A stretch of DNA of 64,000 nt from Entomortierella parvispora E1425 (taxonomy: Eukaryota > Fungi > Mortierellomycota), in contig BQFW01000003.1 in NCBI GenBank assembly GCA_020891255.1, positions 1,612,001-1,676,000 on the forward strand, in the 5' to 3' direction. A program made the translations under genes and the position numbers. Of the stretch, positions 24,676 to 63,107 are shown piece after piece. Under the pieces are notes generated by a model that did no database searches, was not told where the DNA came from, and worked only from the letters and a program-made list of their open reading frames with translations. How positions within the stretch are numbered: the stretch's first letter is position 1; each line of letters begins with the position of its first letter.

Positions 24676-31023
<6,348 letters not shown>

Positions 31024-34190: not shown

Positions 34191-34229
34191 GACGTGTTGG
34201 CGCGCGCTCAGCTTGACCATCAACGAATG

Positions 34230-34740
34230 CAGTATAGGACGGGGCCTTTCTAGGGGCTCCGGTCGTCCGATAGTCTTGACGACTGCCCGCCAATCAGGGC
34301 GATATTGTGTGCGCCCACCAGATCGCGGTGGATCCACCCTTGGACTCTGTACAGGCGCACATACGCATTGAAGGTTTGGCCAGCTTGGTCTTCACGCCCT
34401 TAGCAACGCGCCTCGTGCACATTGTGGTCGTAAGGTACTCGTCCACAAATGCGGTATGGGATCCCAGGGACGTGCTCTATAGTCATTAAAATAAAATAGT
34501 CAGTACTCACACTACCTCCATATTGCTCTGGAAGCGCTCTTTCAACCTTTCAACCTTTCACCCTTTTGTTACCTTTTGAGCCAAGCAGCGGAGGAACGCA
34601 ATATGCATCGAGGAGAGGCTCAGCCCCATTCTGACCCTACCGTTTTCAAGGCCAGGACACGCCTTGATGGATGGAGGTAGGACCAGAAATGCCCATTGAG
34701 AACCTGTCCATACAAGTTTGAAGACTGGCATGAGTTCGAC
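34230..34740 (-). pseudogene. TnpB/Fanzor-like RuvC C-terminal fragment, decayed
   Basis: Joined frames give SLGSHTAFVDEYLTTTMC...KLAKPSMRMCACTE(C)QGWIHRDLVGAHNIALIG...RPEPLERP. This matches the RuvC-II E, Zn finger and RuvC-III D order. Frameshifts and Cys loss. Confidence 0.7.
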
Positions 34741-35569
34741 GCCTTTTGATAAATGGGTCCAATAGTACAAGCTACAATACAGACAACCACAGCATCCAAC
34801 ATACAGTTCTGGAGACGTGGCATTAGTGCAAAAGATGAGATCGAAGGAGAGAACAGAGATCTTGGTGAGGTTGATCAGGTAGTAAGGGCAGTCATGAAGT
34901 GAGGGAGGTCAAGAGGTGAAAGTGGTCAAGAGACAAAAGTGAAGTGGTCAAGAGGCGAAAGCTTTAAATAGTCGGGGGAAGGTAGCGAAGGCGCAGGCCG
35001 TCAATCAGCAATAAAGACCACTGCGTGATGTGGATATTTGGCCTCTACTCTCTACTTTTAGCAGCCTCCCTCACAGCGCGCTATTGTAGTTGGCGCGGAG
35101 GATAATGTGAATAAAATTTAAAAATTACCAGGTCTTTTTATTCAATAAATATTATCATCACTATTTTTTAAATTAGTTTGGCTCATTTTACAGCAACTAC
35201 GACAACAACAAATACCGTGAGTCGTCCAACTTAATTCAGCCGTGTGGACCTGATCAAAGAAGCGATGTCTTTCTTACAAGAACCAGGAGACAGCATCATT
35301 GTCGGATCGATCACTCCTCTTCATCCATCCTTCGTGTGTGTGTGTGTGTGTGCGTGTGTGTGAAGCTGCTTCCTTTCTCCCCCCTCCTTCTTTCTCCCTT
35401 TCACGCTCTCTCTCCCTTCCCGCCCACATCCCGGCTCATTCTTTCTCTTCATCACCAGGAACAATCTTTGTTTCGCGTGCTGACGCTTCCGTCCCACCTT
35501 CACGGTCCCCTTGTCCTCGGTCACTTCCCTTGCTCTCCCCACAGAAGGACGCCCTAAAGACACACCACC

Positions 35570-38500: not shown

Positions 38501-41500
38501 ATCTGATTATCCAGGCACAGCAAGACAAGCTCGAGTGCAAGCCTGGTATGACACTGCGCGAGACGTTCGAGTCGAACGTGAACAGGGCGCTTAATACGGC
38601 GCGTGACGATGCCGGTAAAATGGCGCAGCAGAGTTTGCGCGAGGACAACAACGTGAAGCAAATGGTTATCTCTGGTTCCAAGGGTTCGTTCATTAACGTG
38701 TCCCAGATGACGGCGTGTGTGGGTCAGCAGAACGTGGAGGGTAAACGTATCCCATTCGGATTCAAGTACCGGACGCTGCCCCATTTCACAAAGGACGATC
38801 ACTCGCCCGAGAGTCGTGGATTTGTGGAGAACTCGTATCTCCGTGGTCTTACACCTCAAGAGTTTTTCTTCCACGCCATGGGAGGACGTGAAGGTAAGAG
38901 ATGGTGGAAAGTTGTTTTTATTTGTTCATTTATTTTTATTCTATTTTACTAACAACTCCTAAAACCAGGTTTGATTGATACTGCTGTCAAGACTGCCGAA
39001 ACTGGTTATATTCAGCGTCGTCTGGTCAAGGCATTGGAAGATGTCATGGTCAAGTACGATGGCACTGTCCGAAACTCTCTTGGTCACGTCATTCAGTTCT
39101 GTTATGGTGAAGACGGTATGGACGCCTGTCACGTTGAGAAGCAAAAGCTGGATACTGTCAAGATGTCGAACAAGGCATTCGAGCGAAAGTACCACATTGA
39201 CCTGACTGACAAGTCCAAGGGCTTTAAGCAAGGCACATTGGACTACAGTGTGATCAAGGCCATTGAGGAGGCCGATGTTGAGGCAGCCAAACGTGGAGAA
39301 CCTGATATGCAGACACTGTTGGAGCAAGAGTTCAAACAGCTCGAGGCTGACCGTAACCTGCTCCGCAACTATATCTTTACTGAGGGAGAAGACGGATGGC
39401 CTATGCCCACCAACATCAGACGTTACATCTGGAACTCGAAGCAAATGTTCCACGTTGACCACAAGCGACCCAGTGACTTGGATCCCCGCCATATTCTGGA
39501 GAGTATCCGCAACCTGGAAAAGCAGCTCATTGTTGTCCGAGGCACGGATCGCATCAGTGTTGAGGCACAGGACAATGCCACCCTTTTGTTCCGCATGTTG
39601 ATCCGCTCGACATTGGCTGTTCGCAGAGTCATTGAGGAGTTCCACTTGACCAGAGAGGCGTTTGACTGGGTTGTCGGAGAGATCGGATCTCGCTTCGCAC
39701 ATGCCATGGTCAACCCTGGTGAGATGGTGGGAACTGTTGCAGCCCAGTCCATTGGAGAGCCCGCTACGCAGATGACGTTGAACACTTTCCATTATGCTGG
39801 TGTGTCTTCCAAGAACGTTACACTTGGAGTACCTCGTCTGAAGGAAATTATCAACGTTGCGACCAACATCAAGACGCCATCGCTGAATGTGTACTTAACA
39901 CCCGATTGTGCTCGCAATATGGAGCGTGCCAAGCAGGTCCAGGTCGCACTGGAGTACACCAACTTGCGCAAGGTGACGTCTTCGACCGAGATTCACTATG
40001 ATCCCGATCCCGAGAACACCAACATTGCAGAGGATCAGGACTTTGTGTCGGCGTACTACGCTATGCCTGACGATGACCTGAACCTGTCCCGCACCTCGCC
40101 CTGGTTGCTTCGTATTGAACTCAACCGCAAGATGATGCTTGACAAGAAGTTGACTATGGCGGATGTGTCCAACAAGATCTCGGATGACTTCCAACGCGAC
40201 TTGATGTGTATCTGCTCTGACGACAACGCCGAAAAGCTGATTATCCGCTGCCGTATTATCAGCGAAGAGTCGGCGGACAAGCAGTCCGAGGTACAGGAAG
40301 AGGAGGATGTCTTCTTGAAGAAGATTGAGAGCAGTTTGTTGAGCTCGATTGGACTCCGTGGTATCAAGAACATTACTCGTGTGTACATGGTGGAGAAGGA
40401 AAAGATCTACATTACCACGGATGGTACATTCGACAAGCAGAAGGAGTGGTACCTCGAGACCAGTGGATCGAACTTGAAGGCGGTCATGTGCGAAGAGGAT
40501 GTCGACTCGACCCGCACGTACTCCAACAACTGTGGAGAGGTCATGTCTGTTCTCGGTATTGAGGCAGCTCGTCAGGCTCTGTTGAAGGAGTTGCGTGGAG
40601 TTATTGAGTTTGATGGTTCCTATGTCAACTACCGCCACTTGTCGCTTCTGTGCGATGTGATGACTCACCGTGGCCATCTGATGGCCATTACTCGCCATGG
40701 TATTAACCGTGCCGAGACTGGAGCTTTGATGCGCTGTTCGTTCGAGGAGACTGTGGAGATTCTGATGGAGGCAGCAGCTGTTGGTGAATTGGATGACTGC
40801 CGCGGAGTTGCCGAGAACATCATGTTGGGCCAGCTTGCACCTTTGGGTACAGGCGAGTTTGACCTGATGTTGGACGAGAAGATGCTGAGCACTGTTGTGG
40901 AGGGTCCTCGACCAGGCATGATGGGCATGGGTATGGGAATGGGTATGGGAGGCGACAACATGGCGTCCCAGATGACACCGTACGATGGACGTTCGCCCCA
41001 GTATGTGGACTTTTCGCACCCTGGATCACCCATGGATGCAGTGTTCTCGCCTATGGGCAACTCTGGAGCAAGTTCACCTATGGGAGCAGGCACCTGGGAC
41101 CCATCGAGTCCCTTTGGAGCAACGTCGCCTGGATACTCTCCCAGCTCGCCGATGTACGCGACCAGTCCTGGCTACAGTCCCACGTCGCCATCGTACTCGC
41201 CTACATCTCCCAACTATTCGCCTACGAGTCCCAGCTACTCGCCAACGTCTCCATCATACTCGCCCACATCTCCCTCCTACTCTCCTACGTCGCCATCGTA
41301 CTCTCCCACGTCGCCGTCGTATTCACCTACCTCGCCCAGTTACTCGCCCACGTCTCCCAGCTATTCACCAACGTCTCCGAGCTACTCGCCCACGAGCCAT
41401 GGCTATGGTGCAACGTCGCCTGCGTACTCGCCTACCTCGCCGAGCTACTCTCCTACTTCGCCCAGCTATTCGCCCACTTCTCCCTCGTACTCGCCGACGA

Positions 41501-41916
41501 GCCCAAGCTACTCTCCTACCAGCCCAAGCTACTCGCCCACGTCGCCGTCGTACTCTCCCACTTCTCCCTCGTACTCGCCTACGTCGCCGTCGTACTCGCC
41601 CACGTCTCCGAGCTACTCACCTACGTCCCCGTCGTACTCTCCTACGTCGCCTTCGTACTCGCCCACGTCCCCCTCGTACTCTCCTACTTCCCCCTCGTAC
41701 TCGCCCGCCAGTCCCAGCTACTCTCCCAGCTACTCTGGCTCGACCACGTTCTCGCCCATGGGGTATGGAGGAGCGGCCAACTCTGGAGCAGCGACGCCTG
41801 GACGACCTGCGTACAGCCCTGCAGGACCCAGTGGAACAGGCCCGGCCAATGGGTCTACTACGCCTCGTCAGTACCCTCCTCCTTCGGGTGGAAAGTACTC
41901 TGACGATGAAGAGTAG
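35570..41916 (+). CDS. RPB1: RNA polymerase II largest subunit, copy 2 (intact)
   Basis: Same motifs. Exons at about 35570-35656, 36050-36248, 36349-36419, 36520-36780, 36880-37265, 37381-38893 and 38969-41916. CTD with ~26 heptads. Confidence 0.98.
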
Positions 41917-42143
41917 ATCGTTGAGGATCTTGGATGCAGTCTCGAGGGCGTTCATTCCAATCCTTGAGTGACAGCAAATGAAAGGAAGGGCACTCTTTGT
42001 TTTATTGTAGCAAAATCTGAACAAACCACGAACCAAAAAAACGAATTGCAAAGAACGCAACCACACACCCAATGTATAAAACTTGAATGAATAAACACAA
42101 AAAAAAAATATGCTAAATTGTTTTCATGTTGTTGACAGATAAT

Positions 42144-47257: not shown

Positions 47258-50200
47258 ATGGGATTCAACCATAAGAAAACTACCTTTGGCCTCATGCCAT
47301 CAGCCGCCCGAGGAGGTGGTAGGGGCGGTGCTCGAGGAGCGGCCCGAGGCAGTTTCCAGAAGCGTGGTGGGAAGCCTTACAGAGCTCCTGGCGAACAGGC
47401 CGTTGCATTCGTGGCTACCGGTGACGAGGGTACCCATGTCGAGCAACGGTTCGAAGATGCTGCCATGCAGGACGAGATTGACCGCAAAATGGGCTTTGTT
47501 AAATTCCAAGAAGGACCCGAAAAGTTGGGTTGGCTTATTAATCAGCATGCTGTAAGGACCCTCTGGAATGGAAATGTCGATGGAGAGATGAATGGACGGA
47601 ATTGTTGCATGAAGTTACTTTCATGCGTTCTTGTTACTGACAAGCTTTTTTCTTTTTTCTACTTTTTTTTATCTCGAACAGACCATCGTCAAGGACGACG
47701 ACTGGGCTTCGGGAAGATCTGCAGTAGACTATTACTTTATTCAGGATGATGGAGACATGTTCAAGGCGACGCTCAAATATAGCCCATACTTTTTCATTGC
47801 CACAAAGGTAATGCTGGGACTGGTTCTGGCCTCGTCATAACGATTATGCCGGTTGCGCAGATCAACTCATCGATTCCCTTTTTTGCTGGACCATGGAACA
47901 ATAGGTCGGATATGAAGCCGAGGTTGAGGAATACATCCGGAGAAAGTTTGAAGACACAGTCGAGAAGATTGTCCGAGTGCAAAAGGAGGATTTAGACATG
48001 GTAATGATTTTTTTAATCTTGTTTGATTTTCGACTGCGTTTCTCATCCTTGCAACCATACCTTTCTGACACTGATAAGACTTTTTTATTGCTCCCATTTT
48101 TGAATATAGCCCAACCATCTTTTAGGAAACACTCGGACATATATCAAACTGCAGTTCAGGAATGTTCTCGATCTGCAAGCAGTGCGCAGAGTGATCCTTC
48201 CAGCCGCAAAGCAAAACTTGGCCAAAATGTCCGTCTCAGATACATATGCTGAAGTTGTTGCCGCGGCTGATATGGGCATGCACGACGAACCAGTTGCCTC
48301 AAGAGCCGGAGGAGGAGGCAGCGGATTAGATCAGATTGTCGACATTCGAGAATACGACATTCCGTACACCATTCGAGTCGCCATTGACAAAGGTATAGCC
48401 TTGCTTCCTGTCATAATGCTCTCCATCTGCCAGAATCTCAACGAGAAACAGTAATCTTGACATTAACCATTTGATTTTTGTCCATTTCCTCTAGAAATTC
48501 GAATCGGTCTGTGGTACGATGTAAAGGTCACACCAACAGATGTCACTATTACAAGGCAGATGGACAGAGTTGCCCGTGCAGATCCAGTTGTGTTTGCATT
48601 CGATATCGAAACGACAAAGCTGCCGTTGAAGTTTCCCGACGCTGCTATTGACTCTGTGATGATGATTTCGTACATGATTGATGGACAGGTACGTCACAGT
48701 TAACGGTCAAGAAAAACAGCATATCCGATGAATTTTACTTTTGTTGACAACGGCTCTTCTTAATATCACAGGGCTTCTTGATTACCAACAAGGAAATTGT
48801 CTCCCAGGACATTGAAGACTTTGAATATACCCCCAAGCCGGAATACGAGGGCTTGTTTACCATCTTCAACGAACCCAACGAGGAGGAGTGTCTCCGCCGA
48901 TTTTTCCAACATGTTCAAGAAGCCAAGCCTACAGTGTTTGTCACCTACAACGGAGATTTTTTCGATTGGCCATTCATGGAGGCAAGATCAAAGGTCCACG
49001 GCATCGACATGTTCCAGGTAACCATGGAGTCAATGATGGAGTCCACTTTGTATTCAAAAGAGGACGAAAAATAGTCGACTGACGGCATCTGGAACCTCAC
49101 AAAAATAGGAAATTGGCGTGAAAAAGGATGACGAGGATGAGTACAAGTCCAACACGGCAGTCCACATGGATGCCTTCCGATGGGTCAAACGCGATTCTTA
49201 TTTGCCTATGGGAAGTCAGGGTCTCAAATCGGTCACAAAAGAAAAACTGGGATACAACCCGATGGAAATCGACCCTGAAGACATGACCCGATTTGCATCA
49301 GAAAAGCCGCAGACTCTGGCCCAGTACTCAGTTTCAGACGCTGTGGCGACATACTACCTGTATATGAAATACGTGCATCCTTTCATCTTTTCGCTCTGCA
49401 ACATTATCCCTATGAACCCAGATGAGGTTTTGCGAAAAGGTTCAGGAACGCTTTGTGAGACGCTGCTGATGGTAAGGACCTCCCTTGTCGATTTAATATC
49501 GATATTTTTGTTTGATGGTCAAAATTCCCTGTGTCTAGATTTCCCTGATACTAATCGGGGGGGTTTTTTTAATATATTTAGGTTGAAGCTTGGGTAGGAA
49601 ACATTATCATGCCCAACAAACACACAGAGTCCTACAACAAGATGTACGACGGACATTTGCTGGAGAGCGAAACATATGTCGGAGGACACGTGGAGGCTTT
49701 GCAGGCCGGAGTGTACAGAAGCGATATCCCCAACAATTTTGCGATCGTGCCAGAAACTGCACAGCAATTGATCGATGACTTGGACGCAGCCTTGAAATTC
49801 AGTATTGAGGTTGAAGGCAACATGAAAATGGAAGACGTACTCAACTACGAAGAGGTAAATGATCGCCTCCCCTTTGGAGTTTTAGTGGCTATTATGTTTT
49901 TGTGTGTAAATATATACTCATTTATGGAGTCCATCATGGCTCTCTCTAGGTCAAAGCTGCCATTGTAGCCCCATTAGAGGATTTGCGTGATCGGCCGAAT
50001 CGCAGTGAAAAGCCTAGCATTTACCATCTGGATGTCGCCGCCATGTACCCCAACATTATTCTCACCAACCGATTGCAGCCGGATTCAATCGTGGAGGAAT
50101 CCACCTGTGCTTCTTGCGATTTCAACAAGGTCGGAAAGGAGTGTGATCGACGCATGACCTGGTCCTGGCGTGGAGAGTACTTCCCAGCCAAGAAGAGCGA

Positions 50201-53200
50201 GTACAACATGATCAAGAATCAGCTTGAATCGGAGCGATTCCCTGGCAAGAAGGCTTGGGACGAGCCAAGGACATTTCACAGTTTGACGGAAGCGGAACAA
50301 TCGGCCCTTATCACCAAACGTATTGCAGAATACTCCAGAAAGGTCTACCGTAAGACTCATGAGACCAAGGTTTTGGAGAAGGAGGCTGTGGTCTGTCAGC
50401 GCGAGAACCCTTTCTACGTCGACACTGTGAAAGCTTTCCGTGATCGTCGTTACGAATACAAGGGTCTGCACAAGAAATGGAAGGGCGAGGTGGATAAGGC
50501 GCTAAAGTCTGGCGATCTGGTCGAGATTGAGAACGCGAAAAAGATGGTTGTTCTGTATGACTCATTGCAGTTGGCCCACAAGTGTATTCTCAACTCCTTT
50601 TACGGTTACGTCATGAGAAAGGGTGCTCGCTGGTACTCAATGGAGATGGCTGGAATCGTGTGCCTGACTGGCGCCAGGATTATTCAGCTCGCTCGACAAC
50701 TCGTGGAACAGATCGGACGACCACTGGAACTGGATACCGACGGTATTTGGTGTATCATCCCACAAACCTTCCCCGAGAACTTTACGTTCAAGTTCAAGAA
50801 TGGCAAAAAGTTTGGTATCTCGTACCCCTGTACCATGTTGAACCATCTTGTCCACGCCAAATTCACCAACAAACAGTACCAGGTCCTCAAGAACAAGGAG
50901 GAGAATGAATACGAGACTATCGAAGAAAACAGTATTTTCTTTGAGGTGGATGGACCCTACCACGCCATGATCTTGCCCTCATCCAAGGAAGAAGACAAGT
51001 TGCTCAAGAAGCGTTACGCTGTGTTCAACAAGGATGGATCCATTGCAGAGTTGAAGGGATTCGAAGTCAAGCGTCGTGGAGAGCTAAAGATGATCAAGAA
51101 CTTCCAATCTCAATTGTTCAAGGTCTTTCTCGAGGGTTCGAACTTGGAGGAATGTTACAGCGCTGTCGCAAGAGTTGCTAACCAATGGCTGGACGTCCTG
51201 TACAGTAAGGCTGTCGATCTGGAGGAGAACGAGCTGTTTGACCTGATTTCCGAAAACAGAAGCATGTCCAAGTCGCTGGAGGAGTACGGGGCTCAAAAGT
51301 CGACTTCAATTACCACAGCAAGACGTCTCGGAGAGTTCTTGGGCGATCAGATGGTGAAGGACAAGGGTCTGAACTGCAAGTTTATTATTGCTGCTCAACC
51401 TGCAGGCAGTCCCGTCACGGAGCGTGCTATCCCTGTGGCGATTTTCTCGGCCGAGCCTGCTGTCATGAAGTTTTATTTGCGAAAGTGGCTCAAGGACAAC
51501 AGTTTGCAGGACTTTGATATCCGATCCATCTTGGACTGGCATTATTATCTGGAGCGATTCGGAGGAGTGATCCAGAAGCTGATCACCATTCCTGCGGCGA
51601 TGCAAAAAGTGACAAACCCAATCCCGCGTGTTCGTCATCCTGACTGGCTGTTCAAGCGAGTGATGGCCTTGGACAACAAGTTTAAGCAGCACCGAATCAC
51701 GGACGCGTTCAAGCCTGCGGAGAAGAGACCTTTTGGAGGCGATGGCGTCAATGACCTAGAAGACTTTGGATCCAGACCACAGGAAGGACGAGTTCGACCC
51801 GTTGTCCACAAAATGGGCAAACCAACCAAGAATCAACGGAGCCAGCAACGATCTCTGGAAGAACAAGTTCTGGAACTGGAGCTGCCTGATACGATGCCTG
51901 ACATGTTGACGGATTACCATGGATTCTTGGCTTATCAAAAAAAGAAGTGGAAGCGCCAACGTCTGGAACGTGCGCAGCGCAAGGCACTGGGTCAAGTCCG
52001 TGCCAAGGGACCCGCCGGATCACTCTCTGGATTTATTCAGAAACAATCAACCAACATTTTGACAAACAAATGGCAGATTGTTCAAATTGTCGACACTGAG
52101 ATTCCTGGCGAGTTCCGTCTCTGGATCTTGATCGACAAGACCTTGCACTCGATCCGCGTATCAGTGCCCCGTATCTTTTATGTCAACAGTCGCGTTGAGG
52201 ATGCCAGCCACGAGACCCGTCTCTTCCCTAAACAAAAGATGATCAGGACGCTGCCTCGCGCCCATCCCTGTTTGCATCTCTACCAATTTTCGATGCCCGA
52301 AAGTGTTTACCAAAAGGAATCCAAGAACCTGTCCAGTTTTTTCAGTCACCCAGACGTCGAAGGTGTTTATGAAACACAGCTACCTCTACTCTACCGCGCC
52401 ATTATCAACTTGAGCTGTGTCTGCTCTGTTGCTAACAAAGCCAAGCGTGGACTGGATGAGGGATTTGATCTTGGAGATCTCAAGGCCGAGTCTGAAAACA
52501 AGGATTCATATCTAGAGGAAGATCGGGCGCTCCATTACCTGTTCCTCTACCATGCGACAACGGACACCCGGCATTTATTTGCACTCTACTCTTCTGTTCA
52601 CAACCGCGTGAATGTCTTTGTGGTGGATGCACCTGGTCAGAGAGGCCAGATGCCCAACATGTCCAGGACGTACACGGAAGTGAAGGCAGAGATTGATCGC
52701 ATGGACGCCACAGCTCGCCGACCAAACAAGGCCTTTGAGTACTTTGAGCAGCTTCAATTTGACATTGAATATGCGAGCGACGAGAGAAGCGCTTTCAAGG
52801 GCTTGTCCAAGTGTCTTAGCAAATACCAGGATGAACGTCGTGGACCTACCGCCGTGATCTTGCATACGCCCAGGACCAGACAAAAGATGGTGGAGAGCAT
52901 GAGTATCCTTGCGGATTTCCCATTGATCTCGATGCCTTGCTCCAAGCGATCCAAGCCCTTCCAAGCCCTGGCCTGGCAAACAAACGCCACCAAGCGGATG
53001 CTGGCCCAGTTCTTGACTGTGGGTGGATGGGTGACGGAGCAAATTGCATTGGCAAGATATTCAGACATTCCACTGTGCAACATTGAACAGGATTCGCCCA
53101 TCTTTGTGACGGATATCATCCTGGCGCGCCGTTTGCAGCGACACGACATGTTGCTTTGGTGGTCGCCCTCGAGTAAGCCGGATCTGGGCGGTCGTGAGGA

Positions 53201-54908
53201 CGATGAGAACTTGTCAGGATTCGAGGAGCTCATGGATCCCAATATTAATTTGCCCGGCCATTACGAGACAGTATGCTTGGAAATGGACCTCTTGCACCTG
53301 GCTGTGAACACTGTTCTGCAGTCAAGTTTGATCAATGACCTTGAAGGAGGCGCCGAGGCGGCTCTGGATGCGTCCCATACCTTGGACGACTACAAGACAG
53401 GAAAGGTATCGAGCGTGATCAGCTTTGGTACTGGCACAGCCTCTGCCCAGGCGTTTGCCGTGATCAAGTACATGGTCAGACATTGGGTGATCGAATCGGC
53501 CGAGTCGGACAATCTGTTTGCGGATAGTTTGATTGGACATTTCCACCGGTGGCTGACGAGTCCTAGCTCCAAGTTGTACGACCCGTGCATGTATGCTTTG
53601 GTCCATGGATTGATGAAGAAAGTCTTTTTGCAGCTCGTGGCGGAATTCAAGAGACTAGGCTCGCGCGTTGTCCTGGGTAGTTTCAACAAGTTGACGATCG
53701 TGACGTCCAAGGCCTCTGTCGGAAACGCGTTTGCATATGGAAGCTGGATCATTCGTCACATTCAGTCAAAGCCATTGTTCCTGACGATCACCTTGGCGCC
53801 TATTCATTACTGGGAGCAATTGCTGTGGATGGACTCTGCAAACTTTGGAGGCATCATCTGCCCCAACCCCCACGAGGCCCAGGATGAGGATCAGCCCATG
53901 ATTTTGACCGAGATCAACCGAGATATCCACATGCAATGGAACATTCAGCAGTATTTGCCTGTTGCATTGCATTCGGAATTCTTGAGCACGGTGGCCGAAT
54001 TCTTGGACCAAATCTACAAGTTCCGACACCACAAACAGTTGGCGACGCCTCGATCCGCCTCTGCTACGGCCGACGATGCCAGTCACCAAAATGGCGGCAG
54101 TAACGGATCTCTGGAAGGCGCAATGGATGTGACAACGACCAACGGCAGCGGCAACAAGACGGATCGCAAGACATTGGAGTTGATTGCGTACAAGAAAAAG
54201 CTGATCTCTCAACAAATCTCGCGTCGTTTGCTTCGCGTGTTCCCCGAGATCTTGGTCAAGAAGCGCGAGTCGATGAAGGATCCTCAGACATCGTTCCTAT
54301 ATGCTTTCCCACGTCAACCAGGTTCGCATCTTAAGTTGACCAACCCGGTCCTGGAGTTGGTCAAGTCGATCACGGCTGTGTTTGCGATTGACACGACGAT
54401 CGAGCGAGAGGTCCGTGTCTTGCGCAAGAACTTGTTGGATCTGATCGAGATCCGCGAGTTCTCGCCCGAGTCCTTGTTTGAGAATCCATGCCAGAGCTTT
54501 GTGTTGCGGGGAGTGATTTGCTCGTACTGCAATTACTGTCAGGACCTGGATTTCTGCCGTGACCCCCATTTGTTGCCCAGGATCAAGAAGGATACAGGCA
54601 AGATGGTACTGGGAACGTGGAGATGCCAGGAATGCAAGGAGGAATATGATCGGGAGGCGATTGAGGAGTCGATGGTGGCGATTGTGGAGCGAATGGTGGA
54701 TCAATACCAGATGCAGGATCTGAAATGTATCAAGTGCCGGAGGGTCAAGGCCGATCATCTGGGCGAGTGGTGCGAATGCTCGGGTCGATTTGTCACGGTC
54801 CTGGGCAGGAATGAGTACCTGAAGAAGATGCGCGTGTTTGAGAACATTGCAGAGTTTTATGGCCTGGTCTTGCTCAAGGAGATTGTGACCTGGATCCTGG
54901 CCAACTAG
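47258..54908 (+). CDS. POL2: DNA polymerase epsilon catalytic subunit A
   Basis: [16 protein letters not shown] exonuclease, [41 protein letters not shown]-terminal CSYC/CQEC and CIKC/CEC motifs. Multiple 5' introns. Confidence 0.97.
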
Positions 54909-55850
54909 ATTAGAGGAAAAGTGGCTGTCAGTAAACACTGTGATATTAGATTGTGTTGAGCAACTGGATGGCAGAGTGCGGAAGGGTGATATCAACTGTA
55001 TGCCATAGCGGGACAAAAGGCAAGGCGGAAGACCCGTCGTCGTGTGCTGATCTCTATCGGCTTGCCCCAAGTTGCTTCCGATACCAGCGAAAGATTCTTG
55101 ACGCGCAGACTGCGCACTCAAGGGTACTCATAACTATGATACATGTCCGTCACTTGTGGCGACCTTGAGCCTTCAAAGACAGGCCGCATCACGAACCTGA
55201 ACAATGGCACGACCGATGGGTTTTTGATGCGTCGCTGACGAAAAAAACTATGAACATGCAAATACGAGGTGGAGTGAGAGATGGATGTTTAATAAAAGCC
55301 ATGGCCAATGTATCTCGTATTTACTGTGTCTATCAGTACCACCAGTCATTACATATGAAGATGCTGCAGCAAACAAGTATGTGGAACCCGCCAAGTGAAC
55401 CCACTCCACCATTCTGTTTAAAAAACCCCCTCCCATTGCACCACCAAGTTGACACGGCCTCAGCACAGGGGCGCTTGCGTGCTTCTAGCACGTCGCCACC
55501 AACTTTACGTTGGTGTGGTGTATGGAACTTCCCAGTGACTAGTAACGTTGGGCCCCGGCGCTCCCAAATTTAGCATGGCAGAGAGCCCCAGAACAGTGCT
55601 TTCGAAGGTGCTGGTATGGGTCTTTCAGGGAGAATGCTGTGATGGCGTTAGACTTCAAAAAAGCGCGCTCTGAAAACGTTTTTTTTTTTCGAATTGGATT
55701 TTTTTATTTATTTATTTTTTGAGAAAGAACCAGCCTGGCACCCCTCGGGGGGCGGGGGGTTGCTGGTGCCAGATGGTAGCCCTGCGATTTGTCGAAAATC
55801 ACACAAAAAGAACCAAAAACTCCAACTCGTCGTCCAAGGTTGGGTATTGA

Positions 55851-56126
55851 CTAACAATTTGGGTGACCACGGGTTGCCGTGGAAGGTACCATTTGACCTT
55901 CAGGAGTAGAACACCAGCAATACCCTGTAGAACCGCTGCACTGTATGCGAGAATAGGAGCCATCCGGTTCACATGAAGGAACCATTTGGCCCACCATTCC
56001 AGCTTCCGCCGCTTTCGTCGCCTCATCCCTCCCTTTCTGGCAAGCTGTTGGTTCCGCACTTGCCATCAGGGTCTTGCAAAGCAGGAGAGCCACAACGAAA
56101 ATAAGCGTGTTATTGTTTTGACGCAT
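55851..56126 (-). CDS. Secreted single thyroglobulin type-1 domain protein (thyropin-like), 91 aa
   Basis: Signal peptide, then C...PSCEPDGSYSRIQCSGSTGYCWCSTPEG...C: a six-Cys Tg1 pattern with the QC and CWC signature. TATA at about 56292. Confidence 0.85.
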   Translation of the reverse strand: MRQNNNTLIFVVALLLCKTLMASAEPTACQKGRDEATKAAEAGMVGQMVPSCEPDGSYSRIQCSGSTGYCWCSTPEGQMVPSTATRGHPNC

Positions 56127-56658
56127 TTTTTAGGTCTGATGTAAGAATGGATGAGATCTTGTGCCGATGCTTTCTGGTTTCGCTCTTGACTGCTCTTGTT
56201 TTCGTTTTTTTTTTTTTGGCTGACGAGGAGTGAACTTGCGGGTCTTGCAATCTTGAAGAAAGGAACAGATATGGGTGGGGTAGCGACTTGTTTTTATACG
56301 GTACGTGGATGAGTCAAAAGAGATGAAAACCAGTACAGATGTTTGTCCTTGGGCACGCAAAGAAAGTCATCCGCGAACACAAGTCTCCTTGCCAATAAAA
56401 AAAATAAAAAAAAAAAAAATCTCAGGGGGGATGGAGGGGGTGGAGGAGTAAAAATAGATATTCAGGGAAGGGGGGACGATGTTCAGGGAGGGAGGAACTG
56501 CAAGGCTGCCGGAGGTTGCTTCACGCCTCTCTTATAACTCATTGACTCTAGTCTGATCTAGTTTTACCGCCCCCTTGCACGTTTTTTTTTATTCTTGTTG
56601 CCGGGCCTTGAAGGGTTCACATTCTCATCAAGGTCACGACTATTGTGCTCTTCAGGAG

Positions 56659-56976
56659 TTATAGTTTCCTCATATCGCAATTTGCTAGGACTTTATTATA
56701 TCTCGATATTACTTCTACCACTCTAATTTTTTGACTGGCAGGTATGTTGATGAACGCCGCTTTTCGACCTATCAACCCCAGAAACATACATTCATATCCA
56801 GCAGGACAGGGGCAATCATTTGCTAGGGGTTTAAAATCCTCCGTAGGGAAGTCCGTTGTGTATCTGCATATTTCACCAATGTTGCATTCATGCGGAACAT
56901 AGGCAATTGCGGTCGACAAGAATACTGCCATTATGGCCAAGTTGACAAGGATAAGGAAAATAGTGCAAGAAGCCAT
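56659..56976 (-). CDS. Small secreted Cys-rich peptide, copy B (probable 1-nt frameshift at 56761-56764)
   Basis: Signal peptide, C-x5-CRYTTDFPTEDFKP...C-P-C...EC. An extra A restores ...VHQHTCQSKN-stop, matching the paralog. Confidence 0.8.
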   Translation of the reverse strand: MASCTIFLILVNLAIMAVFLSTAIAYVPHECNIGEICRYTTDFPTEDFKPLANDCPCPAGYECMFLGLIGRKAAFINIPASQKIRVVEVISRYNKVLANCDMRKL

Positions 56977-57496
56977 TACGGAGTTATGGACTGAGTATCA
57001 GAAGTGACGGTTATTTAAGAAATCTGAAAATGGATGAGGTTGGCGAGACCTCAATTATCCATGCAACAAGGATACCAAGGGGTACACGGAAAAGACATGC
57101 CAGGGGCAGGGGAGGGATACCAAGCAAAGATAGGAATGCAGGAGGGAAGGGACAACCAAAAAAAAAAAATCTCACGGGGGGGGGGGGGGGAAGGCAGTAA
57201 AAAAGAGACTTTCAGGGAGGGAGGGACTGCAAGGCACTTCATGTGGCACTTGTGAATTTAAAAAAGAGGTTGAATCTAGCCATTTGCTACAGACGGGGAT
57301 AGACGGAGACAGAAAGCAAAAGTGTATACGAGAGGAACCTTTCATTCAGATAGCTGGTATTTGGGCCTACTACCTGAGCAGGCAATAGCGCTAGAACGCG
57401 ATGATTATTGTCTCTGCCTTCACGAGTAACATCTTTCTCATAAAGCATTTTCAGATTGCATTTGTAAGGACTTTATTTCGATATTTCTTCCACTCT

Positions 57497-57769
57497 TTAT
57501 TTTTTTTTCTGGCAGGTGTAGTAATGAATGGCTTTATTCCAGATGTAATCCCCAGAGTACATGCATTCACCTTCAACACAGATGCATTCATTTTCTGGCG
57601 GCTTAAAATCATCTGTAGGATAGTCCGTTGTATATCTGCAGTTTTGATCAGCATTGCAAATGCTCGAAAAATCGTGATCCAGATTGCCAGGGATGGCAAT
57701 TGCGGTCGACAAGAGTAATGCCAATATTGCCAAGTTGACAAGGATAAGGATAAAAGTGCGAGGAGCCAT
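57497..57769 (-). CDS. Small secreted Cys-rich peptide, copy C (90 aa, 6 Cys)
   Basis: Signal peptide MAPRTFILILVNLAILALLLSTAIA, CRYTTDYPTDDFKP motif shared with copy B, TATA at about 57845. Confidence 0.85.
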   Translation of the reverse strand: MAPRTFILILVNLAILALLLSTAIAIPGNLDHDFSSICNADQNCRYTTDYPTDDFKPPENECICVEGECMYSGDYIWNKAIHYYTCQKKK

Positions 57770-58739
57770 TGTGGAGTTATAGACTGAGTATTCAGAGTAG
57801 TGTCAAGGGATGTTTGAGAAATCTCAGGTTGGTGCGACCCCTTTTATATATGCGAATCGGAACAGCAAAAATGGAACCTTGGAGAAGGACATAGAAAAGA
57901 CATGTCAAAGGAGGGACACCGAGGAAAGATGGGAATGCAGGAAAGACATGTCAGGGGAGGGACGCCGAGGAAAGATGAGAATGCAGGAGGTGAGGGATGT
58001 CCAAAAAAAAAAAGAACGACCAGGCCACTAAGGGTACAGAGTCACATTACTGAGAGTTGGGACGAGCATGGGCGTGGGAGAGCAAGGGCCCATGGCAAGC
58101 GAGAACACCTGGCGGTATCCTAACACCGAGGAAGGATGGAGAAAGATAGCAAAGAGCTGATAAAGAAGAGAAACATAAATAGGAGAGGGAGACGCTAAAA
58201 TAAAGGCAACGGATTCAGATGCTGAAAAAATGACGATGATGGATTAATGCAGAGTGAAAAGAGGCAGGGAGTACTACTGGATAACTGACTTGTGGCAGCC
58301 AAGCGCACATAGCGACGTTGCCCCAGATCCTTCAATGTCGGCTCTTTCCACCGTACTCAGGTTGCAAATGAAGGACTTCTGTTTTTGCTGGGAGGTGACG
58401 TGTGGGAAAGAAAAGAGTAGGAGCGGAAGGGAGAGTGTGAGCTGGAGGGAGGAAGGTAAAAGAAACGTGTGTCGGCGTCAGAGGTGGCTGTTGAAGTCTC
58501 TTGAAATAACGAGAGATGACGCGCCCGCCAGCTCGCAAGGTGCCACCAAAACGCGTCGAACGCGTCCAAGCCTGGAGCATCACTTACGGAGCTCATAGAT
58601 CTTGCTCCATGCCTACTCCCAAACTGATCGAAGAGAGTCTCGGTGTGTACACTGGCGTTATTGGGTACAACATGAATGTCAGTGGGAGGGCATCCCAACG
58701 ACTACCCGATACCCAACAAAATTTGCTTGCATCTCCCTC

Positions 58740-59120
58740 GACTAAGGACGAATTGATGGCCCACGCCCAGACACGCTCACTCTTTGGGCAAGTGCTGAAT
58801 GAGACGGCCTTGCAATCGTTGTTCCATCATTCTTGGAAGAATATAATATTACTGCTACACACGAAAAAGGATCCGGCCATGTTGTAGAGACATGATGCCC
58901 TTGGAACGCCACCAAACTGGATTTGTGAAGAACATGTTCATCAATGGATTGACAACGTCAGCGCTTATGGACAGGGCAAAGGGCAAAAAGTTCCCACATG
59001 TCTGTGTTTGCTGGACCAAGCCAAAGCATGTGACAGAGTCTGCCTGGGTTTTTGGAAGGCAACCCTGGAACATATGAAGCTTCCCCCTACGTTTAACAAT
59101 GGGATCTGCGATCTATATGG
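58740..59120 (+). pseudogene. Non-LTR (LINE) reverse transcriptase relic
   Basis: Joined frames: LFGQVL...SWKNIILLLHTKKDP...HQTGFVKN...ALMDRAK...LLDQAKACDRV...LEHMKLP, matching LINE RT N-terminal motifs including D(Q)xKAxD. Stops and frameshifts. Confidence 0.8.
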
Positions 59121-59970
59121 TATGGGCACTTGAGACCACATGCAGTACCACATCACATCTTGAGAATTCAGATAAGAAGAGAAACAAAAAAAAATCGCAA
59201 GATCAAGAGCAACATCGTTTTGAACTCGTAACTGCCCCTAGTCACAAGCCTCTTATCAGCGGTATCAACTTGTCCTCCTGCACCCTTCCCTTTTTCTTGA
59301 CTAAATTCTATGCATCTCTTTTTTTTTCTTTGTGTGTCTGTGTGTGCGTCGCGAACCCCTGGACCCCCTCACTTCGCTTTTGCTGTATCTGCGTATCTTT
59401 GTGTCCCCCAGGATCCCTCCTTTGTTTCCTACCCTGTGCTATTTATGTATTCTGTACTCGAGGTCTCTTGTCATCCTGTTTTGTATCCGCCTACTTAAAC
59501 AGGTCGAATCTGCTTCGAATCCTGCACGGAAACACAGCACCTTCCACCTCAAGACTTATCACAACTCTGGCCGCAACGCTCAGAGACACAATTCGAAATC
59601 TCTAAGCACACTCTTTTGTTACACCACAGCGAGGCCAGCCCCCGCATCAAAACGTCCACGTCCACGTTGTGCAGAAGTACCATTTTGCTTTTGGTAAGTC
59701 CCCTCAAGCTAGCTGCCCCACCATGTTAATTGACATCACCATTGTCTGATCGGACAAACCTTCTGCTCTACGCATCCTCTAGTACAAGTGCCCCCTCCTC
59801 CGCAGATCCATTCTTGGTCAACAAACTTAAACAGCCCACAAGCCTGACTCATCGCTTTCAACTGGTAAAGCTAAGATGGCCCTTTTGATGATTTGCTTCA
59901 TCTTGCAATGAAAGTGCATCAACTCACAAACTCTAGTTTATATTCTACTCGCGGATAACAATAGGGCACC

Positions 59971-61449
59971 ATGCATGTCATGTTTTTTCTGGCACTCCAA
60001 GTGCTGTCTCTGGCCATTTTGACGGTGTCTGGGCAGCCTGACCTATACAAGGAAATGCACGAGCAGGATCCTGTTTTAAAGTTGGTGGTCCCTTCTCCAG
60101 CTAGTCAAGTGATTCATCCAGGAACATTGCGGGATCAAGCTATGGAAGAGGTTTGCAAACTGCCATCTTGCACTCCTGACACTAATGCCAGCACCCAAGC
60201 CCATACATTCGCAACTGTGGGAATCGATACCGGATCCATGATGTGGGAAAATGTCACAGGGCAAGTCCTTGGATGTTGTCTGCCTCCCAACTCATCGAGT
60301 GCACCTCCTAGCTCTGAGATCTGCGGTATGTCTTGCACGCGTTTTGACTCGCAGTTACCACAGCAACCAAGGCAAGAGATTCCTGCTTTGCGCATCGCAG
60401 TCATTGCCCCTCCACATGAGGCAGTTCCACCCAAACTTTATGGCGGCACGGAACGCGTCGTTTCCTATTTGACCGAGGCTTTAGTGGAGCTGGGACATGA
60501 GGTCACCCTCTTCGCCAGTGGAGATTCGCAGACGAAAGCGACACTTCGAGCAACATGGCCGCACGCCCTGCGCTTAGATCCTTCGGTGCGCGATGCACTG
60601 GCGCCGGTCTTGTTAATACTCGAAGAGGTCTACCAAGTAGCAGACCAATTCGACGTATTGCATTTCCATTTGGATTATCTGCCGTTCTCTTTGTTCTCTC
60701 GCTCTCCAGTGCCCTTTTTGAATACTTTCCATGGACGACTCGATTTACCCGAATTGCAGCCGGTCTTCAATAAGTTCCCGCATGCACCGGTGACTTCTAT
60801 TTCAGATTCGCAACGCTCACCGATACCTCAAGCAAATTGGATGAGGACTGTGTACCACGGCCTCCCCGTGGACTTGCTGACACCACGACTGGACATTCAA
60901 CCCGAGTACCTGGCTTTCTTGGGCCGTATCTGTCCGGAAAAGGGCGTCGACAGGGCCATTCGTATCGCGGCACAATCGGGCCTGCCGCTCAAAATCGCTG
61001 CCAAAGTGGACAAAGCCGACGTGGAGTATTTTGAAACCATGATCAAGCCGTTGCTCGGGCAGGCCCATGTGGAGTTTATTGGCGAGATCAACGAAGCCCA
61101 GAAGCCGGCTTTCTTGTCAGGCGCCAAGGCCTTGCTGTTCCCGATCAATTGGCCCGAGCCTTTTGGTCTCGTCATGATCGAGGCCATGGCGTGCGGCACG
61201 CCTGTGATCGCGTTTAACCGTGGCTCGGTCCCGGAAATCATCGAACACGGGGTGACAGGGTTCATTGTCGAGGATGAACAAGGGGCCATCGGCGCAGTCG
61301 ACCGGATCGAGGGATTGTCACGCAGTGAGATTCGCACGCAGTTCGAGCAACGTTTTAGCGCGCACACGATGGCCAACCACTATCTGGATTTATATCAAAC
61401 TGTGATCCAGCAGAAGCAACATTCGAATTCGCGTCACGTAGTTGGATAG
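59971..61449 (+). CDS. GT4 (GT-B) glycosyltransferase of bacterial type with N-terminal signal peptide and Cys-rich extension
   Basis: RIAVIAPPHEAVPPKLYGGTERVVSYL, LAFLGRICPEKG, WPEPFGLVMIEAMACGTPV. 492-aa uninterrupted ORF. Hydrophobic N-terminus. Confidence 0.92.
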   Translation: MHVMFFLALQVLSLAILTVSGQPDLYKEMHEQDPVLKLVVPSPASQVIHPGTLRDQAMEEVCKLPSCTPDTNASTQAHTFATVGIDTGSMMWENVTGQVLGCCLPPNSSSAPPSSEICGMSCTRFDSQLPQQPRQEIPALRIAVIAPPHEAVPPKLYGGTERVVSYLTEALVELGHEVTLFASGDSQTKATLRATWPHALRLDPSVRDALAPVLLILEEVYQVADQFDVLHFHLDYLPFSLFSRSPVPFLNTFHGRLDLPELQPVFNKFPHAPVTSISDSQRSPIPQANWMRTVYHGLPVDLLTPRLDIQPEYLAFLGRICPEKGVDRAIRIAAQSGLPLKIAAKVDKADVEYFETMIKPLLGQAHVEFIGEINEAQKPAFLSGAKALLFPINWPEPFGLVMIEAMACGTPVIAFNRGSVPEIIEHGVTGFIVEDEQGAIGAVDRIEGLSRSEIRTQFEQRFSAHTMANHYLDLYQTVIQQKQHSNSRHVVG

Positions 61450-61717
61450 TTTTCATTCTTCTAAATAAAAAAAAACTAATTTGACTCACTCCTCCATTGG
61501 CACGTTTTGTTGGTTGCTGGAACGGCCAACATTGTTGATGGCAACCTTTGTATTTTCTTGCAAGTTAAGGAATTCTTCTTTATTGTCCAAGAACATTTGT
61601 AAGATCCAATCCTTGCTCCGGTTGGTGTATCCTTGTTTTTCGGCCACTGACTAGATGTTGTAAACTCTCCATAGCTACGTGTTGGTATGTGTTGTATTGT
61701 TGTTGTGTTTGTTCCTT

Positions 61718-63107
61718 TTAAGCAGAGCGGTTATCGAAGGGCTTGCGGTACTCGATCCTCTCGACCTTGACCTCTCCTTCGATCAATTGATATACATAAA
61801 GAACCACGACCGATCCCTGCAAGTCCATCAACACAAACGAAGGCGTCACGTCCCTAATCACAAAGAAGAGGGACCCCATGTTAGTAACGAGTAAAATTTA
61901 AGGCAAGCGAGAAGAAGAAGAAAAAAGAACATACTCAATTTGTGGGTGGAAGGCTCCTGTAGCGGATCCAGGGTTGACAAAGAACTTGCCCTCATGTTCA
62001 AAGGCCTCAAACTTGTGTGTATGTCCAGTCAACAAGATGTCGACATCCATCTGACGGGCTGTGATGTTGAGAGCCTCGGTATCGCCCCAAGGGATCACCT
62101 GGTGTCCATGCACAACGCCAATTCGGATCGGTCCATGTGTGATGATCTTTGAAAGAGGCCAGGAAGGGTTCTGGAAAAGAAAGGGGATGTGGCAAAAAGA
62201 AGGAAATGGGAAGACATATTAGAACATGAAAACAGAAAACGAGTCATCGACAACCAAGAACAGAGAGTCATGTGGACCATCAGCCTCTGAGAAGAAGAAA
62301 AGATGGGGGACGAAGCGAAGGGTCACGGTCATTACCTGGTCATAGTCTCCACGAACAACCTGGATATCGCCAGCGACAGATCTCAAATAGTCAAATGTTT
62401 CCTTGTCGCACACGTTTCCTGTAGAGATGATTTGTTGAATCTTTCCCGGAACCTAGTTGAGCGATTGAACAAAAAGACAAAAAGACAAAAAGACAATCCG
62501 CGTTTCGGAAAAAAAAAAGTCAGGAACTGCTTTGACCATATTTTCTTTCTTCTAGAGAGGTCCATGTCGAACAAAAAGTGTTTCCTTGCAGAAAATGACT
62601 CCTGGAATCGTGGGAGGAGAAAGCAGCCGAGCCTCTTCTTTTCGGGCTGTGGCGATAAAGAGTCACTCTGAACCATCCTACAAGAGGAGACAGGGATCTT
62701 TCAACATAGGGCTATCTCCTGCAAGATGTTTCTCCTCAAAAAGATCCTGAATGGCCACGCTGTTCTCTATGCTGTCAAGATGAAGCGGTACGGTTTGCAG
62801 AGGTATATTTTTTTGTCCACAAGGTAGTGTCGCTTGTCCTTTATCCCGCCGTTGCTCTGGCAGGTGCGAGTCCATGAAAAAGAGTTTCGATACAACCACC
62901 TTAAGAGGTAATGGGATAAGAAAGAAAGCAAACATACAAGCAGCTTCTTGAACTTGAGAGGCAAGTCATGAGCCCTGTTGGGAATGTGAAGGTCGCCTAT
63001 TACTAGAACTAGCTGATGCCATGAATGAAACAAGTTTTGTTAGAGATGCGGTTCAGACCAGAAGCAAGCAAGCATCAGATATACTCATAGACAGCAAGGG
63101 TTACCAT
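61718..63107 (-). CDS. VPS29: Retromer subunit Vps29
   Basis: ATG-only exon (63107-63105), [40 protein letters not shown]...VYVYQL...VKVERIEY. Four GT-AG introns. Confidence 0.95.

What the first reader, a model, noticed from the sequence alone, without database searches (positions are those of the whole stretch)
55851..56126. Stand-alone secreted thyroglobulin type-1 domain in a fungus
Seen: a signal peptide plus one domain with the six-Cys type-1A pattern and QCSGSTGYCWC signature, intronless, with a TATA box. Known: Tg1 domains are characteristic of animals (thyroglobulin, equistatin, p41 invariant chain), and several inhibit papain-like cathepsins. Inference: a fungal thyropin, from horizontal transfer or ancient opisthokont retention, possibly acting against invertebrate gut proteases.
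Basis: partly seen in the sequence, partly recalled or inferred. Interest (0 to 1): 0.72.

Follow-up and report, generated by a model that had tools for sequence, protein, structure and literature searches.

The report
Secreted thyroglobulin-type-1 protein family in Entomortierella
A soil fungus carries a small family of genes for tiny secreted proteins that each consist of one "thyroglobulin type-1" domain, a module otherwise typical of animals and best known as a cathepsin inhibitor. The copy examined here sits in a young, lineage-specific DNA insertion, so it is a good but unproven candidate for a borrowed protease inhibitor used against soil invertebrates.

Summary
Window 55851-56126 (minus strand) is an intact, intronless 91-codon ORF. 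It encodes a signal peptide plus one complete six-cysteine Tg1 domain: Pfam PF00086 at 60 bits, AF2 pLDDT 93, and best PDB fold match the p41 fragment bound to cathepsin L (TM 0.83).

The genome is Entomortierella parvispora, and DNA polymerase epsilon lies next door, so this is not contamination. The gene is not alone. There are five intact single-domain paralogues on three contigs, plus two decayed copies. They share a signal peptide and fit one clade (AU p 0.63).

Only one paralogue is in public protein sets, mis-modelled and auto-named as Tg1. No paper on fungal Tg1 was found.

The window copy lies in a ~6.5-kb segment that is absent at the same site in five relatives. One of those relatives is 88% identical in DNA. 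The segment also holds two other small secreted Cys proteins and a bacterial-type GT4 gene.

Tg1 is not animal-only, because marine Flavobacteriales and Marinimicrobia MAGs carry it. The nearest full-length relatives are invertebrate.

The genome shows no papain-like protease, so any cysteine-protease target would be foreign. Inhibition, expression, donor and distribution in other fungi remain untested. I rate it a new member of a known kind, of moderate interest.

The parts
55851..56126 (-). Complete intronless CDS (91 codons plus TAG) of a secreted single-domain Tg1 protein
   Evidence: ORF list; Pfam PF00086 at 60.1 bits
56052..56126 (-). Predicted signal peptide (residues 1-25). It is conserved among the five paralogues (72% identity to the C1 copy).
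   Evidence: Alignment A1; region-wise identities. Inferred from sequence features; no predictor was run.
55854..56051 (-). Mature Tg1 type-1A domain (66 aa, six Cys). Predicted as an N-terminal helix plus a small beta-sheet.
   Evidence: AF2 model with pLDDT 92.9. Foldseek best hit 1icf_I: TM 0.83, rmsd 1.8 A, 42% identity.
56291..56298 (-). TATA-like element (TATAAAAA) about 165 nt upstream of the ATG
   Evidence: Read directly from the sequence. A consensus match only.
55699..55722 (-). AATAAA-rich stretch 130-150 nt downstream of the stop; a candidate polyadenylation signal
   Evidence: Read directly from the sequence. Inferred.
55031..61545 (.). Lineage-specific ~6.5-kb segment between POL2 and a Metallophos_2 gene. 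It is absent at this site in five relatives.
   Evidence: tblastx and blastn synteny against L109-L113. Single copy in the genome apart from short repeat fragments.
56659..56976 (-). Small secreted Cys-containing protein (105 aa) within the segment; paralogue of the next entry
   Evidence: ORF list; no Pfam match; only two copies in the genome
57497..57769 (-). Small secreted Cys-containing protein (90 aa), 61% identical to the previous entry
59971..61449 (+). GT4 glycosyltransferase gene inside the same segment. An earlier agent reported it as a bacterial transfer.
Evidence: Its origin was not re-tested here.
49983..54908 (+). Last large exon of the DNA polymerase epsilon catalytic subunit; the conserved left flank
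   Evidence: Pfam; orthologues in Mortierellaceae
61652..63088 (-). Metallophos_2 gene homologue; the conserved right flank, which directly follows POL2 in relatives
   Evidence: Gene tables of L109-L112; tblastx

Best explanation
The ORF is a real gene of Entomortierella parvispora. It encodes a ~67-residue secreted protein that is nothing but one thyroglobulin type-1A domain. It belongs to a small family (five intact copies on contigs C1, C3 and C10) that most likely descends from one ancestral gene of animal-type Tg1 ancestry. That ancestor was gained by this fungal lineage and then duplicated and moved. The window copy arrived at its present site with a young ~6.5-kb insertion. The most likely mode of action is that of a thyropin: the wedge-shaped domain plugs the active-site cleft of papain-like cysteine proteases with its three loops. 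Because the fungus itself shows no papain-like protease, the targets would be foreign enzymes, such as the digestive cathepsins of fungus-feeding nematodes, mites or insects. Shown: domain identity, fold prediction, gene family, genomic setting, and absence at the syntenic site in relatives. Inferred: secretion, inhibition, the target, and the foreign origin.
For: Domain and fold: Pfam 60.1 bits over the full profile. AF2 pLDDT is 92.9. The best solved match is the p41 fragment in complex with cathepsin L, at TM 0.83 and 42% identity. The p41 fragment and other single Tg1 domains are documented cathepsin inhibitors (PMC7863939; PMC10889554).

Real gene: the frame is intact. All six Cys and the conserved G, P, Q and W are kept. 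dN/dS against the C1 paralogue is 0.3-0.5.

Family with one origin: there are five intact copies plus two decayed ones. They share a signal peptide. A tree holding them together is 11 lnL units better than the free tree, with AU p 0.63.

Native but lineage-specific setting: POL2 lies next door. The segment is missing in Gryganskiella, E. beljakovae, Gamsiella, M. alpina and an 88%-identical metagenome relative.

Arms-race signature in the youngest pair (C10b and C10d): mature-domain dN/dS is about 2.5 at dS 0.12. The changes are confined to the three inter-cysteine loops. The upstream DNA is 91% identical against 79% for the mature coding part.

Foreign target: no PF00112 match was found in the 38.9-Mb genome.

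Ecology: the genus is reported with insects and worms (PMC10277274), and nematodes attack Mortierella (reference 8 in PMC8759367).

Animal-type ancestry: the best full-length matches are invertebrate-like (cnidarian, spider, and a contig with a retrotransposon fragment) at 49-54% identity and 78 bits. The best bacterial-genome domain scores 49 bits.
Against: No biochemical or expression evidence exists. No RNA run could be listed. The public RNA-guided annotation did not call this ORF.

The review literature stresses that Tg1 is a structural motif only occasionally used as an inhibitor (PMC7863939).

The dN/dS excess is not significant (Fisher p 0.066), and loops are in any case the least constrained parts.

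The domain tree is unresolved, so no donor can be named.

Paralogues are as diverged at synonymous sites (dS about 1 or more) as housekeeping genes between genera. The family should therefore exist in related species, yet none was seen. That absence rests on a word-indexed search of annotated proteins, which would miss small uncalled ORFs.

The absence of Peptidase_C1 comes from one six-frame profile search.
Confidence: 0.5

Rival explanations
1. The proteins are secreted Tg1 modules with a different job. They might inhibit aspartic or metallo-proteases, including the fungus's own secreted enzymes or those of competitors. Alternatively they might bind some ligand or surface without inhibiting anything.
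For: Individual Tg1 domains inhibit cathepsin D (equistatin domain 2) or metalloproteases (testicans), and many have no shown inhibitory role (PMC7863939; PMC10889554). The IGFBP C-domains, which bind a hormone, are also good fold matches. The paralogues differ greatly in loop lengths, and one (C10a) has only five Cys, which suggests varied specificities.
Against: The window copy is closest in both sequence and fold to p41, a cysteine-cathepsin inhibitor. It keeps the full type-1A cysteine set.
Confidence: 0.3
2. The Tg1 family is an ancient opisthokont inheritance. It survived in this fungal lineage and in animals and was lost elsewhere in fungi.
For: Paralogues are deeply diverged (dS about 1 or more). 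The domain tree does not place them inside any animal group with support. Monophyly of the fungal copies is not rejected.
Against: No other fungal protein was recovered. The window copy sits in a young insertion absent from five relatives. Identity of 50-54% to cnidarian-like domains is as high as between animal Tg1 domains. The domain is demonstrably mobile across kingdoms, because it occurs in bacterial MAGs.
Confidence: 0.1
3. The ORF is a silent relic: a transferred or duplicated fragment that is not expressed and has no function.
For: It is not annotated in the public genome despite RNA-guided gene calling. No RNA run was listed. Decayed copies exist on C10.
Against: The frame is intact, with a start codon, signal peptide and stop directly after the sixth Cys. 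dN/dS is below 1 against the C1 copy. TATA-like and poly(A)-like signals are present. Four of the five intact paralogues are equally unannotated, so non-annotation mainly reflects their small size.
Confidence: 0.08

Closest known systems
p41 invariant-chain fragment (MEROPS I31 thyropin; PDB 1ICF chain I)
   Same: It is a single ~65-residue Tg1 type-1A domain with three disulfides. It is the best fold match (TM 0.83/0.84, rmsd 1.8 A, 42% identity) and a strong sequence match (E 1.8e-13).
   Different: p41 is an exon-encoded insert in a membrane chaperone of vertebrate immune cells. The fungal protein is free-standing with its own signal peptide. Its inhibition is untested.
Single-domain secreted Tg1 proteins of spiders and equistatin-like proteins of cnidarians
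   Same: The architecture is the same: a signal peptide plus one Tg1 domain of 85-101 aa. Identity over the whole length is 38-42%. The nearest named multi-domain relatives are cnidarian thyroglobulin-like proteins.
   Different: Those are animal genes, while this one is in a fungus. No supported phylogenetic link to any one animal group was found.
Mycocypins (clitocypin, macrocypin) of basidiomycete mushrooms
   Same: [quoted passage not shown] This is the functional analogue if the thyropin reading is right.
   Different: The fold is unrelated (beta-trefoil), they are not secreted by a signal peptide, and they come from a different fungal phylum.
Bacterial Tg1-domain proteins of marine Flavobacteriales and Marinimicrobia
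   Same: They share the GSTGYCWC-type core at 44-52% identity over residues 39-91. One is fused to a Kunitz inhibitor domain.
   Different: They match only Pfam profile positions 20-67. They are parts of larger multi-domain proteins with low-GC bacterial context. As full domains they score lower than animal-type domains (49 against 78 bits).

Membership tests
Thyroglobulin type-1 domain (Pfam PF00086 / InterPro IPR000716) | Profile match above the curated gathering score over the whole domain | tested here: met
   60.1 bits against a cut-off of 20.6, profile positions 1-67 of 67. All four other paralogues also pass.
Thyroglobulin type-1 domain (Pfam PF00086 / InterPro IPR000716) | Type-1A pattern: six Cys with the QC and CWC motifs | tested here: met
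   Cys 29, 52, 63, 70, 72 and 91, with Q62-C63 and C70-W71-C72. These columns are invariant or nearly so in a 95-domain alignment.
Thyroglobulin type-1 domain (Pfam PF00086 / InterPro IPR000716) | Fold: N-terminal helix plus small beta-sheet wedge | tested here: met
   AF2 pLDDT 92.9 with helix 3-16 and two strands. TM 0.8-0.9 to p41, saxiphilin, thyroglobulin and SMOC Tg1 domains. This is a prediction, not an experiment.
Thyropins (MEROPS family I31, functional inhibitors) | Contains a Tg1 domain homologous to characterised inhibitors | tested here: met
Thyropins (MEROPS family I31, functional inhibitors) | Measured inhibition of a cysteine (or aspartic) protease | not testable with these tools
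   This needs recombinant protein and kinetic assays.
Thyropins (MEROPS family I31, functional inhibitors) | Three-loop reactive edge compatible with a papain-like active-site cleft | tested here: inconclusive
   The model superposes on cathepsin-bound p41 over 66 columns. No complex was modelled and the contact residues were not checked.
Horizontally acquired gene | Absent from close relatives at the syntenic site, and restricted in taxonomic distribution | tested here: met
   Five relatives lack the ~6.5-kb segment. This holds for the site only; whole genomes of relatives could not be searched.
Horizontally acquired gene | Phylogeny nests the gene inside a donor clade with support | tested here: inconclusive
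   The 91-domain tree has only 4 well-supported branches, and none links the fungal copies to a donor.

The most novel reading that the evidence does not exclude
This is the first thyropin family of the fungal kingdom. An animal-type Tg1 gene was captured by the Entomortierella lineage from an invertebrate associate. It was given a fungal secretion signal and then duplicated into islands of small secreted proteins. It has been driven by an arms race with the digestive cysteine cathepsins of fungus-feeding nematodes or arthropods, an enzyme class the fungus itself lacks.
Probability: 0.3. Interest if true: 0.75.

Novelty: new member of a known kind. Interest (0 to 1): 0.55.

Why it matters
Tg1 domains are described in the literature as modules of the animal kingdom (PMC10889554). 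The known fungal cysteine-protease inhibitors (mycocypins) are unrelated in fold. A secreted, expanding Tg1 family in a soil fungus that associates with invertebrates and lacks papain-like proteases would be a new class of fungal defence or effector protein. It would also be a clean case of cross-kingdom domain transfer, and a source of very small (~7 kDa) cathepsin inhibitors. In addition, it shows that RNA-guided annotation missed four of the five family members. Small secreted proteins of early-diverging fungi are therefore under-counted.

Tried and rejected
1. Single-sequence word-indexed protein search gave no hits. The alignment version returned only the fungus's own EMPS_07270 and three spider proteins. 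This is weak evidence of absence, because small ORFs are rarely annotated.

It was used only as a source of domains.

3. An RNA-run look-up with a 2.5-kb query listed none.

It was redone with a closer set. The hits were marine invertebrate-like or bacterial, and none was recognisably fungal.

5. A bacterial donor was considered because the neighbouring GT4 gene looks bacterial. Bacterial Tg1 domains exist, but they lack the N-terminal part of the profile and score lower. This reading is not favoured and not excluded.

6. The domain phylogeny is unresolved. Only monophyly of the fungal copies could be tested, and it was not rejected.

7. GC3 of the Tg1 genes (0.44-0.58) against housekeeping exons (0.64) is not diagnostic.

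8. A transposon origin of the segment was checked. No terminal inverted or long direct repeats were found at its ends, and there is no second copy in the genome.

9. A search of relatives' whole genomes by locus handle is not possible, because the collection holds prokaryotes only.

It was redone from files by reference.

11. The primary p41 structure paper (PMC1171172) is not held, so loop contact residues were not compared.

Full report
**What is there**

Window 55851-56126 on the minus strand is an uninterrupted ATG-to-TAG frame of 91 codons.
- The first 25 residues have the layout of a secretion signal. This was read from the sequence; no predictor was available.
- Residues 29-91 match Pfam Thyroglobulin_1 over the whole profile (positions 1-67 of 67; E 1.4e-16; 60.1 bits against a cut-off of 20.6).
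- The six cysteines (29, 52, 63, 70, 72, 91) and the QC...GYCWC motif define the type-1A subclass.
- The frame stops directly after the sixth cysteine, so the mature protein is one bare domain.
- A TATAAAAA lies about 165 nt upstream of the ATG. AATAAA repeats lie 130-150 nt downstream of the stop.
- Sequence matches among solved structures are thyroglobulin, saxiphilin and the p41 invariant-chain fragment.
- An AlphaFold2 model of the mature 66 residues, built on a 95-domain alignment, has mean pLDDT 92.9.
- Its best Foldseek hit in the PDB is chain I of 1ICF, the p41 fragment bound to cathepsin L (TM 0.83/0.84, rmsd 1.8 A, 42% identity).
- ESM Atlas matches are all Tg1 clusters.

**Whose gene is it**

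A profile search with the paralogues returned NCBI GJJ74912.1, [quoted passage not shown]. UniProt names it automatically as a Tg1 domain-containing protein. It lies on a contig of 1,814,996 bp, exactly the length of contig C10 of this genome. The assembly (20 contigs, 38.9 Mb) fits the published long-read genome of strain E1425 (PMC8759367).

The gene's left neighbour, 943 bp away and convergent, is the catalytic subunit of DNA polymerase epsilon. It is 73-89% identical to named Mortierellaceae orthologues. This is a native fungal chromosome, not a contaminant.

**A family, not a singleton**

The genome has six PF00086 matches. Reading them gives five intact genes:

| Copy | Contig | Length |
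|---|---|---|
| Window copy | C3 | 91 aa |
| C1 paralogue | C1 | 96 aa |
| C10a | C10 tandem array | 83 aa |
| C10b | C10 tandem array | 96 aa |
| C10d | C10 tandem array | 99 aa |

Each is a signal peptide plus one Tg1 domain. There is also a partial copy without a start codon and a copy with an internal stop.

None of the five exact products is in the 15-billion-protein collection. The only public model, EMPS_07270, fuses one of them to a piece of an upstream kinase-like gene.

The signal peptides are alike in all five, while the mature domains share only 29-50% identity. In fact the window domain has more than 100 foreign domains that score better than its own paralogues.

A maximum-likelihood tree of 91 domains is almost unresolved, with 4 well-supported branches of 88. 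Forcing the six fungal domains into one clade gives a tree 11 log-likelihood units better than the free search found, with AU p 0.63. Together with the shared signal peptide, this favours a single origin followed by diversification in the lineage.

**Age and selection**

Synonymous divergence was calibrated on POL2 and compared with the Tg1 paralogues:

| Comparison | dS | dN/dS |
|---|---|---|
| POL2, window vs closest relative found (L113) | 0.63 | n/a |
| POL2, window vs Gryganskiella | 1.55 | n/a |
| Tg1 window vs C1, signal part | 0.64 | 0.30 |
| Tg1 window vs C1, mature part | 1.2 | 0.47 |
| Tg1 C10b vs C10d, mature domain | 0.12 | 2.5 |

- The window copy and the C1 copy are an old pair under purifying selection.
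- The youngest pair, C10b and C10d, has 39 replacement changes against 5 silent ones in the mature domain (Fisher p 0.066).
- Every difference falls between C1-C2, C3-C4 or C5-C6, and none falls in the core. Those three stretches carry the L1-L3 loops that contact the protease in thyropins (PMC10889554).
- The upstream non-coding DNA of this pair is 91% identical, against 79% for the mature coding part.

This is suggestive of diversifying selection, but it is not statistically secure.

**Genomic setting**

POL2 orthologue contigs were fetched from five sources:
- Gryganskiella cystojenkinii
- Entomortierella beljakovae
- Gamsiella multidivaricata
- Mortierella alpina
- a metagenome contig 97% identical in protein and 88% in DNA

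In all five, the POL2 stop is followed within about 200-350 bp by a Metallophos_2 gene. No Tg1 profile match occurs within 10 kb.

In the window, homology ends near 55,031 and resumes at 61,546. A ~6.5-kb segment is therefore specific to the E. parvispora lineage, and it is younger than a split at dS 0.63.

Besides the Tg1 gene, the segment holds:
- two paralogous small secreted cysteine proteins with no Pfam match (56659-56976 and 57497-57769)
- a 168-codon ORF
- the GT4 glycosyltransferase that an earlier agent attributed to bacterial transfer

The segment has no terminal repeats. It is single copy apart from 70-80-bp fragments of a dispersed repeat.

The window copy is older than its locus. 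The likeliest history is an existing family member relocated into a growing island of secreted-protein genes. Import of the whole segment from outside is not excluded.

**Where else the domain occurs**

The literature calls Tg1 an animal module (PMC10889554), and no paper on fungal Tg1 was found.
- Pattern scans found the same GSTGYCWC-type core in many marine metagenome contigs.
- It also occurs in 16 prokaryotic species genomes, mostly Flavobacteriales and Marinimicrobia MAGs.
- An Atlas cluster of 150 bacterial members carries PF00086.
- One bacterial-type protein joins Tg1 to a Kunitz inhibitor domain.

So the domain crosses kingdoms. The bacterial domains match only profile positions 20-67, and as full domains they score 49 bits against the window domain. 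Eukaryotic domains score 78 bits.

The nearest full-length relatives that could be named are cnidarian thyroglobulin-like proteins and single-domain spider proteins. An unnamed close relative sits on a gene-poor contig beside a retrotransposon fragment, which suggests an invertebrate genome. Animal-type ancestry is therefore favoured, but no donor can be named.

**Function**

Shown: the protein is a complete Tg1 domain whose predicted shape is closest to a proven cathepsin L inhibitor.

Inferred: it is secreted and inhibits papain-like cysteine proteases by the three-loop wedge mechanism.

A six-frame profile search found no Peptidase_C1 in the fungus, so such targets would be foreign. The genus is reported from insects and soil worms (PMC10277274). 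Fungivorous nematodes are a known threat to Mortierella (reference 8 in PMC8759367).

Basidiomycetes use unrelated inhibitors (mycocypins) in a comparable way (PMC7863939).

Against this reading, Tg1 is only occasionally an inhibitor. Some Tg1 domains hit aspartic or metallo-proteases, which the fungus does have. No expression or activity data exist.

**Verdict**

| Claim | Confidence |
|---|---|
| Genuine secreted Tg1 gene | about 0.9 |
| Gained rather than anciently inherited | about 0.7 |
| Acts as a cysteine-protease inhibitor | about 0.45-0.5 |

It is a new member of a known kind in an unexpected kingdom. One paralogue is already auto-labelled in UniProt, but the family is undescribed. 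The decisive missing piece is a DNA-level survey of other fungal genomes, which these tools could not perform.

Noticed in passing
window 56659-56976 (-) and 57497-57769 (-): Two tandem paralogous genes encode small secreted cysteine-containing proteins (105 and 90 aa, 61% identical). They have no Pfam family and occur only here in the genome. The nearest ESM Atlas feature hits are unnamed arthropod clusters at 0.86-0.87, which is below the reliable range. They lie within an internal ~790-bp tandem duplication (about 56,800-58,013).
   Followed up: partly
G000 C10 130.7-135.5 kb (L007 2776-8060): A tandem array of Tg1 genes sits here. A ~2.7-kb unit was duplicated together with part of a kinase-like gene. 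The public model EMPS_07270 (166 aa) fuses that fragment to a Tg1 gene. One copy lacks a start codon and another has an internal stop. The C10a copy has only five cysteines.
   Followed up: partly
L025 4992-5969 (+); L037 4935-6143 (+); L088-L103: Marine Flavobacteriales-type proteins begin with a Tg1 domain. It is fused to a Kunitz/BPTI inhibitor domain in L025, or to DUF4886 in L037. Both have C-terminal tails that look like type-9 secretion sorting signals. Marinimicrobia MAGs also carry Tg1. This contradicts the view that the domain is confined to animals.
   Followed up: partly
whole genome G000: A six-frame search found no match to Peptidase_C1 (PF00112). The fungus appears to lack papain-like cysteine proteases.
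   Followed up: partly
window about 57,320-57,390 and 58,272-58,357: Two fragments of 70-80 bp belong to a dispersed repeat. About 20 or more copies occur on contigs C5, C11, C13, C16 and C18. There the two pieces lie about 190 bp apart; here they are about 960 bp apart.
   Followed up: no
window 49983-54908 vs L109, L110: POL2 of E. parvispora is closer to Gryganskiella cystojenkinii (89% aa, dS 1.55) than to its nominal congener Entomortierella beljakovae (80% aa, dS saturated). The genus may not be a natural group, or that assembly may be mislabelled.
   Followed up: no
window 24510-42110: A large inverted duplication contains two 981-codon ORFs in mirror orientation. Another agent has already reported it as a head-to-head RPB1 pair.
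   Followed up: no
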